Shown here one piece after another: positions 1 to 14,370 of a stretch of 64,000 nt of DNA. Position 1 is the stretch's first letter; every line of letters begins with the position of its first letter. Both the position numbers and the translations under genes were made by a program. This DNA comes from Phyllobates terribilis. Its lineage: Eukaryota. Below the pieces are notes generated by a model, which did no database searches, was not told the DNA's origin, and saw only the letters and a list, made by a program, of their open reading frames with translations. Location of the stretch: assembly GCF_046119375.1 (NCBI RefSeq), contig NW_027362761.1:971416001-971480000 (forward strand), read 5' to 3'.

Positions 1-882
1 ATCCTCCATTATTTTCGTAGAGCCGTTACCTTCCTCCGGGTGAGATGGAGGCAAGGGTTCCACAGACTGTATAGAATTTTGGTTGATAGTATATAATTTG
101 GCTAGCGTAGCATACCGGGGCAGGTATACTTCCCTTTTCCCGATATTTATTATACGAACGGGCACCCTCCCATGGCGTACATCAACTACCCCCCGTGCTG
201 TCAAAATGGTGGGCCTACTGTCTGAGTAGACTGGTTCTACCATGGCCTGGTAATCTCTACCTCTCAGACCAATAGCTGCCCGGCACCAAATCATCATTTC
301 ACTTTTCGGGGGCATGGCAATAGGGAAAGGGTCACACATTCTTACGCTACCAATCTCACCACCGGAGAGTTCCACCTGTTGCCGTCGCATCAGTGCCCGG
401 ATCTCTTTCTGGAGCACTCGCTGCTGGCCGGAGCTGGCGTTCTTGGCAACCTGCTGTAAAATGAAAATCACCTCTGCAAGACAATTTTCAATCACATTAG
501 TTCCTAGAGTTATCTTTTGGTGACTCTCGCGCTTGTCAATGTCTACAATGATCAGTCCCTGTGCTGCCAGTTCGACTCTACCGATTTTAATGGTCATTTC
601 TTTAAATCCGATCTGTGGCACGGGCTGACCATTACTGGCGATGATACTCAAGTCGTCGTCTGGATAGCGGGTTATATCCGAGTCATTCCAGTACTGCTTG
701 AAGAGCACGTACGGGATGGTGGTGACCTGTGACCCGGTGTCCAGTAGGGCACTCATAGGGATGCCATCCAGTACCACAGGCAAGACTGGACATCCTCCCA
801 CATATTTGTCGCGCCAGTTCGATGGGCCTGGTGATCTTTTTCCTGGGGGTTGGCCCTCTACCCCAGGTTGTGCCAGTTTAAA
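1..882 (-). CDS. Gypsy pol N-terminus (aspartic protease plus linker), in the -1 frame relative to gag, incomplete at the window edge
   Basis: Manual translation gives ...PVVLDGIPMSALLDTGSQVTTIPYVLFKQYW...ITLGTNVI... with DTG at 733-741 and no stop between 900 and 1. It is missing from the ORF track, presumably because it has no stop inside the window. Confidence 0.88.
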
Positions 883-1838
883 GGACAGTACCTTGCCATA
901 TGTCCGGGTTGATTGCAGCGGCGGCAGATGGGTTGGCCGTCCTCGTTGTATCGGTCGCTGGGTCTTCCTCTGGCCGGTGGGGTCCTCCTTGGTCGACGCC
1001 ACGGGATGTCCTCCGGTCCGGATGCCAGCTGGATCTTCCCTGGAGTGGAAACCTGTAAAGACTGCACAGTTCGGGTTAGCGCAGCAACGCTTTTAGCTAG
1101 CTCTTGGACCTGATGGTGCAGGTCCGGAGCCGGGTCATTGTTCATAGCCTGCGCATCAGCTCCCACAGGCCCTACCGACAAGGGCGCCGCCTCCTGGTGG
1201 TAAGCGGTAGTAGGGCGCCTGTGGGTCACCACGCCACCCGGTGCCGGTTCTCGGAGCACCCGGATGGCTCTGTCCTTGAACTGTGCAAAGTCCAGATGGG
1301 GATCCTGTAAGGCCATTGCCCGCAACTGGGTTCGGTGGGCATTGCAATATAGTCCCTCTATAAATTGTTCGGTCAACAGCCTGTCCTCGTTTCCCACGCC
1401 GTCAGGGTCGGTCTGTTTAATGGCTCTCAGGGCCTCTTGTAGGTTTAGTGCATAGTCCCTTATACTCTCCTGTGCTCGCTGCTTGCACCCATAGAATCTA
1501 AGCTTAATCTCGGCTGAGGTGCGGGTATCAAAGGTGTCCCTCAGCCGGGTTAGTATCCCTGCGACAGTCCTCCTCCCAGGTGGCCAGGACTTTACCTCCC
1601 TTTGGGCTGCCCCGGTTAGTTGGGCCACCAGGATGCTCACTTTTTGCTCTTCTGTGAGGGGGTACACCTGGAAGAGGCTATCCAGCTTTTCTTTAAAGTC
1701 ATTCAGGGTATGTGACTCCCCTGAGTACTGGGGTAGCCAGGCTGCTCCCGGGATATAGGGCATGGTGAAAGGCATGACTGCAGCAGCGGTGGCGCTGGCG
1801 GGGGTTGAGGCAGTGAAGCTCTCCTCCGTATCCGACAT
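858..1838 (-). CDS. Gypsy Gag (capsid-like region plus CX2CX4HX4C zinc knuckle), 326 aa, intact
   Basis: CRRCNQPGHMARYC knuckle; capsid-type motif KQRAQESIRDYALNLQEAL...QFIEGL; lies directly downstream of PBS and LTR. Confidence 0.92.
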   Translation of the reverse strand: MSDTEESFTASTPASATAAAVMPFTMPYIPGAAWLPQYSGESHTLNDFKEKLDSLFQVYPLTEEQKVSILVAQLTGAAQREVKSWPPGRRTVAGILTRLRDTFDTRTSAEIKLRFYGCKQRAQESIRDYALNLQEALRAIKQTDPDGVGNEDRLLTEQFIEGLYCNAHRTQLRAMALQDPHLDFAQFKDRAIRVLREPAPGGVVTHRRPTTAYHQEAAPLSVGPVGADAQAMNNDPAPDLHHQVQELAKSVAALTRTVQSLQVSTPGKIQLASGPEDIPWRRPRRTPPARGRPSDRYNEDGQPICRRCNQPGHMARYCPLNWHNLG

Positions 1839-2064
1839 CTTTCTCCCCCCCTAGTGGACCGTGGCCTACCTTGCAATGATCCTCTTCCGTAGGCCGCGGC
1901 TCCGCAGTGGATCGTCAGGGTTGAGGACCTTCCGTCGCGCTCCTGTGACATCGGCGTCTGCTGGGCTCCTTCCAGGACCTTACGCAAGTCCTGACGTGAG
2001 GCGGGGCTTCAGTTCTCGCGCGCTTTCAGAGTCCACGCCCCTCTTCTTCCCGCGCGGCGTCTTC

Positions 2065-2211
2065 AAGATGGCGTCCAACGGCGGGAAAACTCCACGGATG
2101 GCGGGAAGAAGGCAGAAGATGGCGCCGGATGGCGGGAAAACTTCGCGGATGGCGGGAAGAAGGTAGAAGATGGCGCCGGATGGCGGGAAACCTCCACGGA
2201 TGGCGGGAATC
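2065..2211. repeat. 51-bp tandem repeat, about 3 copies, in the Gypsy leader
   Basis: AAGATGGCG recurs at 2065, 2116 and 2167 (period 51). Confidence 0.9.
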
Positions 2212-2276
2212 TTCACCACTGGTAAGTTTGAACAGTCTTTTTCAGGCACGCAGTACCCGGTGGTTGCGGGCACAAA

Positions 2277-2294
2277 ATCCTGCCGACTACGCCA
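2277..2294 (-). promoter_or_regulatory. Primer binding site complementary to the tRNA-Ser 3' end
   Basis: Plus strand reads ATCCTGCCGACTACGCCA, the 3' end of vertebrate tRNA-Ser including CCA, 5 nt from the LTR end. Confidence 0.85.
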
Positions 2295-2299
2295 AAAGT

Positions 2300-3284
2300 T
2301 GACGCGCCCCTGGGCCTGCTTGGTGTAGCGTTGCGCACGCGGGGACTACCCGGAGCCGGGCCTGTTGGGGGTAGTAGTCTCGTGGCGGTGACCCGGTCCG
2401 TGCCCAGGGAGTCAAACTGTGTGGCTGAGTATTAGCAGTAGATGTTGGACGACTACGCCACCCGTTGAATGCAGCTATGGAACTGCCGCTGCAGGGCAGA
2501 CCGCTGAGGCCGGTGGTACGATGGTGCAGCGTAGATGGTATAACCCCCAACGGGAGGGGTATGGCCTCAGGGCAGCCGACGTGGATGATGGGGGTAGCAG
2601 GAACCACTCAGAGACGATGCGGTGTAGTTCAGGGTCTTTACTGGTGATAAAGATAGACCCTCCCGGAGTACTGGCTAGCGATCGGGGCCTGGTCAGTCTT
2701 TGAGCAGATGGGATTTCCCCTGGCCAGGCGGAGTTGTAGGCCTCCCCAACTAATTGTACTCTTCTGGCTACCTTGCTAGAGGCGGGTAAAAGTAGCCCAC
2801 GTCCCTGAGTGTACCGTGTGGTGCTCACCCGTATGGCCGGTGACTCGGGGCCTTCTAGTGGCTTCCGCTCCACGACGGCGGTGCTGGTCCCACGCGTGTG
2901 ACCGTGCCTTCGGGTTTCTTGGCCAGAGGACCTGAAATCCCCTGCCGGTCGGTTTCTGCTGCTGGGTAAGGATTAGTCCCCACAGCCTCGGACTCCGGGT
3001 CCGGTGGTAACTCTTCAATCAGGGCGAGCTCTACAGCTGCCAGCCCCTGATTCCTTTTAGCACGACTTCCCCAGAGCTCATGATCTCTCTCTCCTATAGC
3101 TGCTTCTCCTCTTCTTAACTCACTAACCCTGCCTCAGCCCCAGTTTTATATAGGGGAAGTGCTTCCCCTCCCAGGACTGGGCAGGAGGTGTGGCATGCAT
3201 AGGATTCCTGACCAGGAGACCTCCCACCTGCTCTCAGACGTAATATCTCTATTACTGTGGCAACCAGACCCCTGGGGTGTCACA
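2300..3284 (-). repeat. 5' LTR of the Gypsy element (985 bp)
   Basis: Minus-strand termini TGTGACAC...CGCGTCA; TATATAAAA at 3144-3152; candidate AGTAAA poly(A) signal at 2637-2642; homologous to 7308-8340. Confidence 0.88.
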
Positions 3285-3580: not shown

Positions 3581-3785
3581 GAATGTAATTACATTGAGGT
3601 TACATTGGTGAGTCTGGTTTTTATACTAAAGATCCTGCTGTGTTTTTATAGTTTTGTTTGTTTTTTTATGTCTCTTCAAATTTGTATTGGAGTGCGTCCT
3701 AATTTTTGGCAGCCCTTGAAATTGTTGCATACGCAATAATAGTATAGGAGACACACTCCTTAATAATGGGAAGGACAATTCAAAT

Positions 3786-3890
3786 AGTGAGCCCCAATGG
3801 GGACAGTGCCGATAATGTCTGTAAATTGTCAGAATTGTAAAGGGCTGCTGAATATGTTGGCGCTATATGAATAAAAAGATTATTATTATT
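3786..3890 (+). mobile_element. 5'-truncated SINE (3' part of the family at 14085)
   Basis: Near-identical to 14265-14370, ending in an (ATT)n tail. Confidence 0.8.
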
Positions 3891-4329
3891 AAATTGATTC
3901 TATATTCTAATATTATCTGTCTTATCTGAAATTCGGTTACGGGTGAGCAATCGCAGCATGAATAGCGTATTACACCGATCCAGCCAGGTATTATTGCCTT
4001 ATACTGCGTGCTGCTGAAAAAAAAATACAAATCTATTCTATTCCCATTCGATACCACTGTTAGATACATTTACAATAGGGACAGGTGCTGCTAGGTGGTA
4101 TCATCAGCTCGAGATGAGTGTTCATTCTGGTCGCATAAATCTCTTCCACAGTCCATAACTTTTTTTTTTATTATTATTTATTTGGCCTTATATACAAGTC
4201 ATGACCCTGCAAAGAATCTTTCTTAACATTTCTTCCTGGAAAATCCATTTTAGCTTCATTTTTGTATGTTTTATTTTCGGTCTGTAAAAGTGGCGTAATA
4301 CTCTGACAACATTGCTCACAGATATGCTA

Positions 4330-5950
4330 TTGGTCAGCGACCAAGTGTAAATAGGTTTGAACAGCACAACTGGAAGTCTTTAAATGGTGTGTAATATCTG
4401 GTACGCTCCCAATAAATTCTGGATTATTAGCGCAGTAATATCTGATCCCGTCTGATAACAATGGTTTTAGGCAGTGGTCTTGTAGTATGGTATTGGCAAT
4501 GGTCAGCGACCAAGTGTAAATAGGTTTGAACAACACACAACTGGCAGATTTTAAATGGAGTGTAATATCTGGCACTTTCCCCAAAAATTCTGGATTATTA
4601 GCACAGTAATATCTGATCCCATCTGATGACCACGGGTTTAGGCAGGCAGTGGCCTATTAGTATAATATTGGTCAGCGACCAAGTGTAAATGGGTTTGAAC
4701 AACACACAACTGGCCGACTTTAAATGGCGTGTAATATCTGTCACGCTCCCCAAAATGTCACGATTACTACAGCAGTAATATGGGATCACGCCTGATGACC
4801 ACAGTTTTAGGCAGTGGCCTATTAGTATGATATTGGTCAGTAACCAAGTGTGAATAGGTTTGAACAACACACAACTTTCACTGGAGTTTAATATCAGGTA
4901 CGCTCCTAAAAAATTCTGGATTATTAGCTCATTAATATCTGATCCCGTCTGATAACCACGGTTTTAGGCAGTGGTCTTGTAGTATGGTATTGGCAATGGT
5001 CAGTGACCAAGTGTAAATAGGTTTGAACAGCACACAACTGGCAGATTTTAAATGGAGTGTAATATCTGGCACGCTCCCAAAAAATTCTGGATTATTAGCA
5101 CAGTAATATCTAATCCTGTCTGATGAAAATGGTTTTAGGCAGTGGCGTTCGAGATATGGTATTGGTCAGCGACTAAGTGTGAATTGGTTGAACAACACAC
5201 AACTGGCAGACTTTAATTGGAGTGTAATATTTGGCACGCTCCAAAAAATGTTATGATTATTACCGCAGTAATATGGGATCACATGTGATCACCAAGGTTT
5301 TAGGCAGTGGCGTTAGAGATATGGTATTGGTCAGCGACTAAGTGTGAATAGGTTGAACAGCACACAACTGGTAGACTTTAAATGGAGTGTAATATTTGGC
5401 ACACTCCAAAAAATGTCACGATTATTATTGCAGTAATATGGGGTCACGTCTGATGACCACGGTTTTAGGCAGTGGCCTATTAGTATGATATTGGTCAGTG
5501 ACCAAGTGTGAATAGGTGTGAACAACACACAACTGGCAGACTTTATCTGGAGTGTAATATCAGGTACGCTCCCAAAAAATTCTGGATTATTAGTGCAGTA
5601 ATATCTGATCCCGTCTGATGACCACAGTTTTAGGCAGTGGTGTTAGAGATATGGTATTGGTCAGCGACTAAGTGTGAATAGGTTGAACAACACACAACTG
5701 GCAGACTTTAACTGGAGTGTAATACTTGGCACGCTCCAAAAAATGGCACTATTATTATGCAGTAATATGGGATCACATCTGATGACCACGATTTTTGGCA
5801 GTGGCATTAGAGATATGGTATTGGTCGGCAACTATGTGTGAATGTTGAACAACACACAACTGGCAGACTTTAACTGGAGTGTAATATTTGGCATGCTCCA
5901 AAAAATGTCACAATTATTACGGCAGTAATATGGGATCACATCTGATGATG
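4330..5950. repeat. Tandem array of ~165-bp units, about 10 copies
   Basis: Anchor GGTC(A/G)G..AC at 4332, 4501, 4670, 4835, 4998, 5164, 5329, 5493, 5659 and 5823 (periods 163-169). Confidence 0.95.
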
Positions 5951-7307: not shown

Positions 7308-8340
7308 TGACGCGCCCCCTGGGCCTGTGCTGTGCAGGGGATACCGGAGCCGGATCGCTGGGGGTTGTAGTCCTCTGTGGCGGTGACCCGGTCCGTGCCC
7401 AGGGCGGTCAAACCAGTGGCAGTCTGAGTGTGATAACAAATGTCCGAATACGCCACCCGTGGATTGCGGTCAGTGGGGATCGCCGCTGCGCTGCAGACCG
7501 CTGAGGCTGATGTTGTATGCGCAGCCAAGTATGGGATAACTCCCCACGGGAGAAGTATTGCCTCAGGGCAGCTAGTGTGGATGATGGGAGTGATGGTGTG
7601 AGCGTCCCAGTACTGATGGTGCTGGTGCGGCGATGAAACACAGAGACGTGTGGTGCAGTTCAGGGTCTTTACTGATGGAATAACGCAGACCCTCCCGGGA
7701 GTACTGGTTAGCAGTAGGGGCCTGGTCAGTCTGTAAGCAAGCAGGATCTCCCCTGGCCAGGTGGAGTTGTAGGCCTCCCCGACTATCTACACTCTTTCCT
7801 GGCTACCTTGCTGTGTGCGGGTAGAAGTAGCCCACGTCCCTGAGTATACCGTGTGGTGCTCACCCGTATGGCTGGTGACTTGGGGCCTTCCGTTAGCCTC
7901 CGCTTCACGATGGCAGTGCTGGTCCCTTGCTTGTGACCGTGCCTCCAGGCTTCTATGGCCAGAGGACATGGAATCCCCTGCCGGTTGGATTCTGCTGCTG
8001 GACCTGGATGTCCCCACAGCCTCGGACTCCGTGTCCGGGTTTAGTGTCTTCAGCCAAGGCGAGCTTTCTAACTTCCAGCCTCTGGCACTCGCTCCTGCTC
8101 CTACAGAGCTCCTGTTGTCACTTTCCCTGTGTCTGCTGTCCTCCAGACCTGACTGCGTCTCTGTCTGGGACTTCACTACCTAATCCCGCCCCAGACCCAG
8201 TTTATAAGGGCAGATTCCTCCCCTCCCAGGTCTGGGCGGGCAGTGTTGCATGCTTAGGGCTCCTGACCAGAGAAACCTCCCACTTGCTCTCAGACATAAT
8301 ATTTCTATTACTGTGGCAACCAGACCCCTGGGGTGCCACA
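7308..8340 (-). mobile_element. Solo LTR of the Gypsy family at 1-3284 (diverged subfamily), 1033 bp
   Basis: TG...CA termini; 4-bp TSD CATA at 7304-7307 and 8341-8344; collinear homology blocks with 2300-3284. Confidence 0.92.
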
Positions 8341-13101: not shown

Positions 13102-14084
13102 TTAATTCACAAAAGTAGAACGTAAGTGAAGTAATTAACTTTATTGGTGGAATCTATTCAAAATAGGAAATCAAAGAAAAACAATTTCCATGGTAACAGT
13201 GCCATCCTTGAGAGCTAGTCTCTAAATGATGCTTCGTGTTGTAGTATGAGTAGGATCAGACGTCATAGCAATCTGTCTCCTCCGTACTCTTACTACTGCG
13301 CATATAAAGCTCTCTGCCATCAACCTGCTGTTGTTGACAATTCAAGTCTGTATAAGAATGCGGTTTTATCTATCTCATTACAGGAATATCATGGCTCTAG
13401 ATGCCGAGCTAGCAGAAAGGCTGCACCTATAAAGCTGAATTCAGCACCATCCAAATAATTAAACTTGTAGGAGATCTTATTTTAGTTTTTATTGGAAGTA
13501 AATTAACAAGTCTGTGCTTTTTTCTGCAATAAGACATTAGATACAATTAGCGCAGCTTTGAGAGGAAAGGATTAAGTGCAATTGAATCGGAAAACCTGGA
13601 GACCATTAGCCGGTAGTGAAACTTATACCAACCTTTTTTCAATCCTCCTCTAGTGTACTGTATGTATGCTATCCAATACTAGTCACTGCATTTATTGACG
13701 CATACATCTTGACGCAAACCTCAAGCGAGAATCTATATTTCAGGCAAATGCTACATGTGTATAGTTTAAGTATTACACATCTTTGACAAATGAAAGTCTG
13801 ATCCATTCCTTTAAATTCTTTGGGGTATTATGCAGGCAGTGCTACTTCAGGCTTCGTGACAAACATTTTTAGCATAAAGTATAAAAATATCTACCTATAA
13901 TATACTGCTCCATGGCAGCCCTTTCCTTTTATAATTGGGAGTAAGTGGAGAAAGGCTCACAAAGTTCCAGCACAAAGCAACAAGACATGGGAAAAACAAT
14001 GCAAGTGTTAGATTGAAAGTTATTTACAGTGGGTCTTGGGAGCAAACATAAGAGAAAAGTTTCACTTAAAGGGGACTTTGTATA

Positions 14085-14370
14085 GGGCAGCACGGTGGCT
14101 CTGTGGTTAGCACTGCAGCCTTGCAGTGCTGGGGTCCTGGGTTCAAATCCCACCAAGGACAACATCTCCAAGGAGTTATATGTTCTCCCCATGTTTGCAT
14201 AGGTTTCCCCCAAGTTCTTCAGTTTCCTCCCTACTCCAAAGACATACTGATAGGGAATGTAGATTGTGAGACCCAATGGGGACAGTGCCAATAATGTCTG
14301 TAAATTGTCTGAATTGTAACACGCTGCAGAATATGTTGGTACTATATAAATAAAAAGATTATTATTATTA
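14085..14370 (+). mobile_element. tRNA-derived SINE, V-SINE-like
   Basis: A-box TGGCTCTGTGG and B-box GGTTCAAATCC; central ATGTTCTCCCCATGTTTGC...GGTTTCC...GTTTCCTCCC domain; (ATT)n tail. Confidence 0.88.

What the first reader, a model, noticed from the sequence alone, without database searches (positions are those of the whole stretch)
824..882. Complete -1 ribosomal frameshift cassette: UUUAAAC plus predicted H-type pseudoknot
Seen: pol is in the -1 frame to gag, and its first ATG lies only 5 codons before DTG, too late to encode a whole protease. Gag reads CCT TTA AAC, a correctly phased U UUA AAC heptamer (876-882). After an 8-nt spacer comes a 7-bp stem CCUGGGG/CCCCAGG (861-867 with 842-848). 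Its loop GGGCC (852-856) can pair with GGCCC 13 nt downstream (824-828), and the gag UAG sits in loop 1. Known: UUUAAAC plus pseudoknot is the coronavirus-type signal, and the Gypsy-derived gene PEG10 uses GGGAAAC plus pseudoknot. Inference: a functional -1 PRF element in an amphibian Gypsy family whose gag and visible pol are both intact.
Basis: partly seen in the sequence, partly recalled or inferred. Interest (0 to 1): 0.7.

Follow-up and report, generated by a model that had tools for sequence, protein, structure and literature searches.

The report
Frog retrotransposon gag-pol frameshift signal
This is the gag-pol ribosomal frameshift signal (slippery site plus a conserved RNA stem and probable pseudoknot) of a very abundant frog retrotransposon; the signal looks real, but it is an ordinary kind of signal for such elements.

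Summary

- **Reading frames:** gag (1838-858) overlaps a -1 pol frame that is open from 1092 to the window start. That frame has no ATG until 5 codons before the protease DTG.
- **Slippery site:** U_UUA_AAC (882-876) is the only in-phase slippery heptamer in the 235-nt overlap.
- **Structure:** an 8-nt spacer is followed by a 7-bp stem. Five nt of its 12-nt loop can pair with GGCCC 13 nt further on.

The single-sequence folding energy is no better than shuffles. The support is comparative. I fetched eight relatives (gag 37-57% identical to the window's), one of them from a run listed for the tree frog Litoria. All keep the same layout.
- All 107 testable base-pair cells are paired.
- Three pairs show compensatory double changes, two in stem 1 and one in stem 2.
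- Shifted registers drop to 68% paired or less.
- The heptamer varies among UUUAAAC, UUUAAAU, UUUAAAA and GUUAAAC, the last being the equine arteritis virus type.

Stem 1 is well supported. Stem 2, and so the pseudoknot, is probable, with one covariation event.

The element is a PNMA-like Ty3/Gypsy (Metaviridae) retrotransposon, present in very high copy in this genome's sequencing runs. It is a new member of a known kind. The scan noted the same cassette on another piece of this genome (s1-230123, unchecked).

The parts
858..1838 (-). gag ORF (326 aa): PNMA-like or Retrotrans_gag capsid region plus a CCHC zinc knuckle. Its stop, UAG, is at 860-858.
1..1092 (-). pol reading frame, -1 relative to gag. 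It is open from the stop at 1095-1093 and runs off the window start. It encodes an aspartyl protease with DTG at 741-733. Its first ATG is at 756-754.
858..1092 (-). gag/pol overlap (235 nt), the only stretch where a -1 shift can join the two frames.
876..882 (-). Slippery heptamer U_UUA_AAC, correctly phased; the only in-phase XXXYYYZ in the overlap.
   Evidence: the same position is kept in 8 relatives
868..875 (-). 8-nt spacer (UGGCACAA). Its length is fixed across the family and its sequence varies.
861..867 (-). Stem 1, 5' arm (CCUGGGG).
857..860 (-). Loop 1 (UAGA), which contains the gag stop codon.
852..856 (-). Stem 2, 5' arm (GGGCC), inside the stem 1 loop.
849..851 (-). 3-nt junction between stem 2 5' arm and stem 1 3' arm (AAC).
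842..848 (-). Stem 1, 3' arm (CCCCAGG).
829..841 (-). Loop 3, 13 nt and purine-rich (AAAAAGAUCACCA). It is 13 nt in 8 of 9 lineages and 16 nt in L006.
824..828 (-). Stem 2, 3' arm (GGCCC).
2065..2209 (-). Context: 51-nt tandem repeat (2.8 copies) in the 5' leader of the element.
2300..3284 (-). Context: probable 5' LTR of the element. It is followed at 2294-2276 by a TGG-initiated candidate primer-binding site.
   Evidence: the LTR call is an inference from the repeat match and its position

Best explanation
The stretch is the programmed -1 ribosomal frameshift signal of a high-copy, PNMA-like Ty3/Gypsy (Metaviridae) LTR retrotransposon of a poison-frog-related genome.

Proposed mechanism:
1. 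Ribosomes translating gag reach U_UUA_AAC with the Leu and Asn tRNAs in the P and A sites.
2. Eight nucleotides downstream a 7-bp G+C-rich stem sits at the mRNA entry channel and resists unwinding.
3. A fraction of ribosomes slip one base back (UUA to UUU, AAC to AAA).
4. Those ribosomes read on into protease-RT-RNaseH-integrase and make Gag-Pol. The rest stop at the UAG five codons past the heptamer and make Gag.
5. The stem is probably reinforced into an H-type pseudoknot. Five loop bases pair with a segment 13 nt downstream, and the purine-rich 13-nt loop 3 lies along stem 1.

Shown here: the frame layout, the heptamer, both pairings, their conservation and their covariation. Inferred: the slippage itself, its efficiency, and the tertiary fold.
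For: **Frames.** pol is -1 to gag and has no ATG from its upstream stop to 5 codons before DTG. The only in-phase heptamer in the overlap is TTTAAAC.

**Family layout.** Nine lineages with DNA (the window plus L001-L008; relatives' gag 37-57% identical to the window's) all have pol in -1. All have a heptamer at the same place. In L006 and L007 the -1 frame opens only 3 codons before it. In the window gag stops five codons past it. A shared shift site is therefore confined to about 34 nt.

**Spacings.** They are fixed at 8 / 7 / 4+5+3 / 7 / 13 / 5, with loop 3 of 16 nt in L006.

**Pair counts.**
- 107 of 107 cells form standard pairs.
- Double changes occur at S1 columns 30/51 (CG, UA, UG), S1 columns 32/49 (AU, GC) and S2 columns 41/72 (AU, GC).
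- No shuffle reaches the observed pairing or covariation score.
- Slid registers give at most 68.5% paired.

**Independent events.** On the gag tree the S1 position-3 change needs at least 2 independent events. S1 position 5 needs one and S2 position 3 needs one. Several C-G to U-G changes keep pairing.

**Not gag coding alone.** In the window gag stops inside loop 1, yet the downstream arms are kept. The constraint there is not on the gag tail.

**Third codon positions.** In the pol frame they are 0.76-0.80 identical in the first 20 codons, against about 0.4 afterwards.

**Heptamer variants.** UUUAAAC, UUUAAAU and UUUAAAA fit the classical XXXYYYZ pattern; that they work as shift sites is from memory. 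GUUAAAC is the listed shift site of equine arteritis virus.

**Abundance.** 23,381 contigs were laid from one run, 6,094 of them at 99% or more alike. None of the 40 best-supported differences falls in 793-935.
Against: - No translation data exist here, and the one run labelled RNA is only a guess.
- MFE z-scores are not significant.
- Rfam has no matching family.
- Only nine sequences were compared. Seven belong to one clade, so the shuffle control overstates independence.
- In eight of the nine members, all but the window copy, the cassette is also coding in the gag frame. Part of the conservation could therefore be due to protein.
- S2 has a single double change, and a G-U pair would have sufficed there.
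- The 3-nt junction between the stems is longer than the 0-1 nt I recall for classical coaxially stacked H-type knots.
- An 8-nt spacer is at the long end of the usual range.
- Five lineages have G_UUA_AAC, which is not a strict XXXYYYZ.
Confidence: 0.8

Rival explanations
1. The -1 frameshift is stimulated by the stem 1 hairpin alone. The GGRCC...GGYCC complementarity is kept for coding reasons (Asp/Gly and the invariant Gly-Pro of the pol N-terminus, plus the gag tail), and no pseudoknot forms.
For: - S2 shows only one double change, in the window lineage.
- Its 3' arm encodes an invariant Gly-Pro in pol.
- The 3-nt junction is atypical for an H-type knot, as I recall them.
- A paper title and abstract listed (PMC3203594, not opened) state that stem-loops can substitute for a pseudoknot in -1 frameshifting.
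Against: - All 44 testable S2 cells pair.
- The Gly third position, a synonymous site in pol, is U in all 8 relatives. It is C only where the partner is G.
- The distance from stem 1 to the S2 3' arm is exactly 13 nt in 8 of 9 lineages, although the loop 3 sequence varies.
- The pol-frame codon before S2 always ends in G, although the amino acid varies among E, K and R.
Confidence: 0.17
2. The conserved block reflects only dual coding (gag tail and pol N-terminus in overlapping frames). Any slippage depends on the heptamer alone, without an RNA stimulator.
For: Eight of the nine members, all but the window copy, read the block in both frames. Third-position conservation is expected under overlap.
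Against: - Compensatory changes at three pairs change amino acids in both frames yet always restore pairing.
- The window copy ends gag before most of the block and still keeps it.
- The spacer and loops vary while the arms do not.
Confidence: 0.02
3. There is no programmed frameshift. This copy is a dead element with a 1-nt indel, or pol is made by internal initiation or from a spliced RNA.
For: Degenerate or fused copies exist. P0006 of D. tinctorius is an in-frame gag-pol fusion, and P0042 of P. terribilis has a shifted gag end.
Against: - The same -1 arrangement occurs in nine diverged lineages. Three of them have pol-frame reading frames of 1,333-1,385 codons that are open from the heptamer.
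- The pol frame has no ATG until 5 codons before DTG.
Confidence: 0.01

Closest known systems
-1 frameshift signals of PNMA3 (Ma3), PNMA5 and PEG10, mammalian genes domesticated from Metaviridae
   Same: All are Ty3/Gypsy-derived, with a gag (CA-NC) frame followed by a -1 frame. All have a classical heptamer ending in AAAC followed by an H-type pseudoknot (PMC5009743; PMC11299033). The window's gag hits the Pfam PNMA model, and the relatives carry PF14893.
   Different: - Those genes use G_GGA_AAC. This family uses U_UUA_AAC, U_UUA_AAU, U_UUA_AAA or G_UUA_AAC.
- Those are immobile host genes. This is a very high-copy mobile family whose -1 frame encodes PR, and in relatives a full PR-RT-RH-IN.
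- Homology of the pseudoknots was not tested. No mammalian DNA was compared.
gag-pol -1 frameshift sites of animal LTR retrotransposons in general (2003 survey cited in PMC5009743)
   Same: pol is in -1 relative to gag with a classical tandem-shift heptamer in the overlap. The survey reported this for 28 of 51 animal elements.
   Different: That survey was mostly of Drosophila elements. This is a vertebrate (anuran) PNMA-like lineage, and its downstream structure has covariation support.
Arterivirus and coronavirus ORF1a/1b frameshift signals
   Same: The heptamers are the same: UUUAAAC in coronaviruses and several arteriviruses, GUUAAAC in equine arteritis virus. All have an H-type pseudoknot after a short spacer (PMC3835772 Table 1).
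   Different: In most of those viruses S1 is 10-14 bp with a spacer of 3-7 nt and long connecting loops. Here S1 is 7 bp (10 bp with a bulge in one clade), S2 is 5 bp, the spacer is 8 nt and loop 3 is 13 nt. There is no sequence relation.
Small retroviral frameshifting pseudoknots (SRV-1 and MMTV gag-pro)
   Same: Small H-type knots with 5-7-bp stems and a purine-rich loop crossing stem 1. This comparison is from general knowledge; one search supplied paper titles and abstracts only.
   Different: Here 3 unpaired nucleotides separate the stems and loop 1 is 4 nt. No structure or mutagenesis exists for this cassette.

Membership tests
Programmed -1 ribosomal frameshift signal | Downstream ORF in the -1 frame, overlapping the upstream ORF, with no start codon of its own | tested here: met
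   pol is -1 to gag with a 235-nt overlap and no ATG until 5 codons before DTG. The same holds in 8 relatives.
Programmed -1 ribosomal frameshift signal | In-phase slippery heptamer X_XXY_YYZ inside the overlap | tested here: met
   U_UUA_AAC at 882-876 is the only one in the overlap. Relatives have UUUAAAU, UUUAAAA or UUUAAAC, and five have G_UUA_AAC, which is not strict but is the listed EAV site.
Programmed -1 ribosomal frameshift signal | Stable RNA structure starting about 5-9 nt after the heptamer, supported by conservation or covariation | tested here: met
   8-nt spacer and 7-bp stem. 63 of 63 S1 cells pair, with two pairs showing double changes. The hairpin scores -7.1 to -13.7 kcal/mol across the family.
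Programmed -1 ribosomal frameshift signal | Measured frameshifting or a detected trans-frame Gag-Pol product | not testable with these tools
   No reporter, proteomic or ribosome-profiling data were available. The run labelled RNA is only a guess and is held as contigs.
H-type frameshift-stimulating pseudoknot | Loop of stem 1 pairs with sequence 3' of stem 1 (stem 2), kept across relatives | tested here: met
   44 of 44 testable S2 cells pair. There is one pair with a double change (AU in 8 sequences, GC in 1), and the loop 3 length is fixed. This is modest support resting on a single event.
H-type frameshift-stimulating pseudoknot | Near-coaxial stems (junction of 0-1 nt) and tertiary loop-stem contacts | tested here: inconclusive
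   The junction is 3 nt in all nine sequences. Loop 3 is purine-rich, with two invariant A positions. The 3D fold cannot be tested here.
Coronavirus-type frameshift element (Rfam families) | Match to a curated covariance model; S1 of about 11-14 bp | tested here: not met
   No Rfam match at E up to 1. S1 is 7 bp, against the 11-14 bp listed for most coronaviruses in PMC3835772.
Metaviridae (Ty3/Gypsy) LTR retrotransposon, PNMA-like gag lineage | gag with capsid and a CCHC nucleocapsid knuckle; PNMA-type domain | tested here: met
   zf-CCHC scores above its cutoff. PNMA (22.4 bits against a cutoff of 25) and Retrotrans_gag score just below theirs. Relatives carry a precomputed PF14893 hit.
Metaviridae (Ty3/Gypsy) LTR retrotransposon, PNMA-like gag lineage | pol domain order PR-RT-RNaseH-IN, flanked by LTRs | tested here: inconclusive
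   In the window only PR is visible, because pol runs off the start. Relatives L003, L006 and L007 have PR-RVT_1-RT_RNaseH-Integrase_H2C2-rve. The 5' LTR at 2300-3284 is inferred, and the 3' LTR lies outside the window.
Domesticated PNMA3/PNMA5/PEG10 genes | Immobile host gene with a G_GGA_AAC shift site | tested here: not met
   The family is high copy and the heptamer differs.

The most novel reading that the evidence does not exclude
The cassette may be the ancestral frameshift module of the whole PNMA-like metavirus lineage, homologous to the signal that mammalian PNMA3 and PNMA5 still carry. Under this reading the pseudoknot scaffold stays fixed at 8/7/12/7/13/5 while the slippery heptamer is swapped freely (UUUAAAC, UUUAAAU, UUUAAAA, GUUAAAC, GGGAAAC). 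That would give a natural series for studying how shift-site identity and stimulator co-evolve. It would also date the PNMA3/5 signal to before domestication.
Probability: 0.2. Interest if true: 0.55.

Novelty: new member of a known kind. Interest (0 to 1): 0.4.

Why it matters
Programmed -1 frameshifting between gag and pol is textbook biology for retroviruses and many LTR retrotransposons, so the mechanism is not new.

What this adds:
- A well-delimited, covariation-supported stimulator for the PNMA-like metaviruses. Henriques et al. (PMC11011659) reported these as still active in amphibians, reptiles and fish. No paper found here's literature searches describes their recoding signal.
- Retrotransposon lineages that use the non-canonical G_UUA_AAC heptamer.
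- For genome annotators, it explains why gene predictors call 'uncharacterized protein' gag ORFs in poison-frog genomes. It also marks where a ribosomal-slippage join belongs.

Tried and rejected
- **Rfam** scan of 1-3000 at E up to 1: no match.
- **MFE folding** of 61 nt and 141 nt: not better than shuffles. This was rejected as a test, because the region is G+C-rich and pseudoknots are not modelled.
Only their protein ends could be read.
- **Profile-guided scans** for more loci in metagenome and viral contigs: none confirmed.
- **Degenerate DNA pattern** of the invariant cassette positions in metagenome contigs: 0 matches.
- **Second copy in the window:** none.
- **Wills et al. 2006** (Ma3 pseudoknot): not held. 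The PNMA3 structure therefore could not be compared, and no mammalian or human DNA was fetched or compared.
- **RNAalifold consensus**: it proposes a 3-bp extension of stem 1 past a bulged A. This holds in the L002-L005, L007 and L008 clade but not in the window, and two small inner pairs compete with S2. I kept it only as a clade-specific feature.
- **Transcriptional slippage:** rejected, because there is no homopolymer run.
- **Not used:** the large representative protein search, structure prediction and complex prediction. The proteins were not the open question.
- **Consensus:** The consensus lines that the alignment tools print were not used.

Full report
**1. Observation**

Read on the minus strand, the window carries a 326-codon gag ORF at 1838-858. 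Pfam finds a CCHC zinc knuckle above its cutoff. PNMA and Retrotrans_gag score just below their cutoffs.

The frame one base back (-1) is open from the stop at 1095-1093 to the first base of the window. It encodes an aspartyl protease with DTG at 741-733.

Gag reads CCU UUA AAC, so U_UUA_AAC (882-876) is correctly phased. It is the only in-phase XXXYYYZ heptamer in the 235-nt overlap.

The downstream layout is:

| Part | Window coordinates | Letters |
|---|---|---|
| Spacer | 875-868 | 8 nt |
| Stem 1, 5' arm | 867-861 | CCUGGGG |
| Stem 1 loop | 860-849 | 12 nt; begins with the gag UAG (860-858) and contains GGGCC (856-852) |
| Stem 1, 3' arm | 848-842 | CCCCAGG |
| Loop 3 | 841-829 | 13 nt |
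| Stem 2, 3' arm | 828-824 | GGCCC |

Every coordinate of the finding is right.

**2. Is it more than chance?**

On this sequence alone the answer is mixed.
- ViennaRNA returns the 7-bp stem as the centroid. The free energy is no better than dinucleotide shuffles (z +0.70 for 61 nt, +1.49 for 141 nt), because the region is G+C-rich.
- A positional test is more favourable. Only 0.8% of shuffles of the 100 nt after the heptamer have a Watson-Crick stem of 7 bp or more at spacer 4-9. Only 0.13% also have a 5-bp pairing between loop and downstream sequence.
- An in-phase A/U-type heptamer somewhere in a shuffled overlap occurs in 12% of shuffles.
- Rfam has no match.

**3. Relatives**

The gag protein finds relatives in poison frogs and allies: Phyllobates terribilis at 87%, Anomaloglossus baeobatrachus at 65% and Dendrobates tinctorius at 61-64%. 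A profile search adds more distant members from Logan and ENA assemblies.

Eight smaller contigs were served, L001-L008. Their gag is 37-57% identical to the window's.

One of them, L007, comes from a run listed in the data statement of the Litoria verreauxii alpina genome paper (PMC12171712). The hosts of the others are unknown to me.

Three relatives (L003, L006, L007) carry called pol genes of 1,303-1,360 codons with PR, RT, RNase H and integrase domains in that order. The element is therefore a Ty3/Gypsy (Metaviridae) LTR retrotransposon with a PNMA-like gag. Henriques et al. report this lineage as still active in amphibians, reptiles and fish (PMC11011659).

**4. The cassette across the family**

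In all nine lineages pol is -1 to gag, and a heptamer lies at the same place after the last Cys of the zinc knuckle.

| Heptamer | Lineages |
|---|---|
| UUUAAAC | window, L006 |
| UUUAAAU | L001 |
| UUUAAAA | L003 |
| GUUAAAC | L002, L004, L005, L007, L008 |

GUUAAAC is not a strict XXXYYYZ. It is the shift site listed for equine arteritis virus (PMC3835772 Table 1).

In L006 and L007 the -1 frame opens only three codons before the heptamer. In the window gag stops five codons past it. A shift site common to the family is thus confined to about 34 nt around the heptamer.

The spacings are the same everywhere:
- spacer 8 nt;
- stem 1 of 7 bp;
- a 12-nt loop made of 4 nt, the 5-nt stem 2 arm and 3 nt;
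- loop 3 of 13 nt (16 nt in L006);
- stem 2 arm of 5 nt.

**5. Base-pair test**

- All 107 cells with letters form standard pairs.
- Stem 1 position 3 is C-G in six sequences, U-A in two and U-G in one.
- Stem 1 position 5 is A-U in six and G-C in three.
- Stem 2 position 3 is A-U in eight and G-C in the window.
- No shuffle of the 3' partners reaches the observed pairing or covariation score.
- Sliding the partners by 1-3 columns drops pairing to 18-68% and removes nearly all double changes.

On a gag tree the window groups with L001 and the dendrobatid proteins. L006 groups with the other clade.
- The U-A/C-G exchange at stem 1 position 3 therefore needs at least two independent double changes.
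- Stem 1 position 5 needs one, and stem 2 position 3 needs one.
- Several C-G to U-G changes keep pairing.
- No change breaks a pair.

The spacer, loop 1 and most of loop 3 vary freely.

**6. Coding as a confounder**

The block is coding in pol, and in eight of the nine members also in the gag tail. Third codon positions of pol are 0.76-0.80 identical over the first 20 codons, against about 0.4 further on, even where amino acids are better conserved. By itself that could reflect the overlap.

Three things argue for an RNA constraint:
- The compensatory changes alter amino acids yet always restore pairing.
- In the window lineage gag ends inside loop 1, so everything downstream is outside gag and is still kept.
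- The Gly codon in the 3' arm of stem 2 has U at its synonymous third position in all eight relatives. It has C only in the window, where the partner is G.

**7. How strong is each part?**

Stem 1 is well supported. Stem 2 rests on complete pairing, fixed distance and one double change. A G-U pair would also have been tolerated there, so the likelihood gain from that event is modest.

The three unpaired bases between the stems are more than the 0-1 nt I recall for classical coaxial knots. I put the frameshift site with stem 1 at about 0.9 and the pseudoknot at about 0.65-0.7.

In the L002-like clade stem 1 can extend by three pairs past a bulged A, which shortens the spacer to 5 nt. That extension is absent in the window.

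**8. Abundance**

One DNA run of the window's organism gave 23,381 contigs on the first 2,400 bases. Of these, 6,094 were 99% or more alike. Runs of three other coded organisms hold the stretch too.

This is therefore a very abundant family, probably recently active in these frogs (inferred from the many near-identical contigs). None of the 40 best-supported differences from the window copy lies between 793 and 935, so the cassette here carries the family's common letters. A further 216 weaker differences were not shown.

Whether the element is transcribed is not shown. The runs labelled RNA are guesses and are held as contigs.

**9. Comparison with what is known**

- -1 frameshifting between gag and pol is common in animal LTR retrotransposons: 28 of 51 in a 2003 survey cited in PMC5009743.
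- The domesticated relatives PNMA3, PNMA5 and PEG10 use G_GGA_AAC with an H-type pseudoknot (PMC5009743; PMC11299033).
- The heptamers here are those of coronaviruses and arteriviruses. The structure is much smaller than theirs and, from what I recall, resembles small retroviral knots.
- I could not compare it with the PNMA3 knot. The original paper is not held, and I fetched no mammalian DNA.

**10. Verdict**

This is a new member of a known kind of signal. It has unusually clean comparative support for stem 1 and probable support for the pseudoknot.

The scan noted the same cassette on another piece of this genome (s1-230123). It also noted a copy said to keep the signal although gag and pol are in frame (s1-198951). 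Both are unchecked.

Noticed in passing
window 2276-2294 (minus strand): TGGCGTAGTCGGCAGGATT follows the probable LTR end and looks like a primer-binding site. From memory it is complementary to the 3' end of a vertebrate tRNA-Ser. No tRNA-Ser gene is in the window to check against. A partial copy, TGGCGTAGTCG, also lies at 2460-2450.
   Followed up: partly
window 2065-2209: A 51-nt tandem repeat, 2.8 copies at 89% match, lies in the leader between the LTR and gag. Family contigs show many length variants and joints here (tables 4 and 5).
   Followed up: partly
window 2300-3284 and 7308-8340: The probable 5' LTR matches a second stretch about 5 kb away at 74% identity in the same orientation. 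This may be a solo or neighbouring LTR of a related family.
   Followed up: no
window 4320-5950: Array of mutually similar units (77-87% identical, offsets of about 165-170 nt), satellite-like, with short ORFs on the minus strand that repeat the same peptide.
   Followed up: no
window 14074-14161: ARAGORN calls an odd tRNA-like gene with an undetermined anticodon. It may be a tRNA-derived SINE. Nearby, 14263-14370 matches 3784-3891 at 90%.
   Followed up: no
P0006 (Dendrobates tinctorius) and P0042 (Phyllobates terribilis): Annotated frog proteins that are altered family copies. P0006 reads from gag straight into the pol frame, joined right at the cassette. P0042 has a shifted gag C-terminus. 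P0003 has Asp where the heptamer's Asn codon would be.
   Followed up: partly
window 1845 and 1987: In the three smaller runs laid (X12, X9, X10), almost all contig depth lacks one base at 1845 and has an extra C after 1987. In the large DNA run X1 only a minority of depth shows either change. Both sites are in the 5' leader just upstream of the gag ATG (table 4).
   Followed up: no
L002 1673-1686: In L002 the GUUAAAC heptamer is followed directly by GGGAAAC, the PNMA3/PEG10 heptamer. It is out of phase for a -1 shift, and only this copy has it.
   Followed up: no
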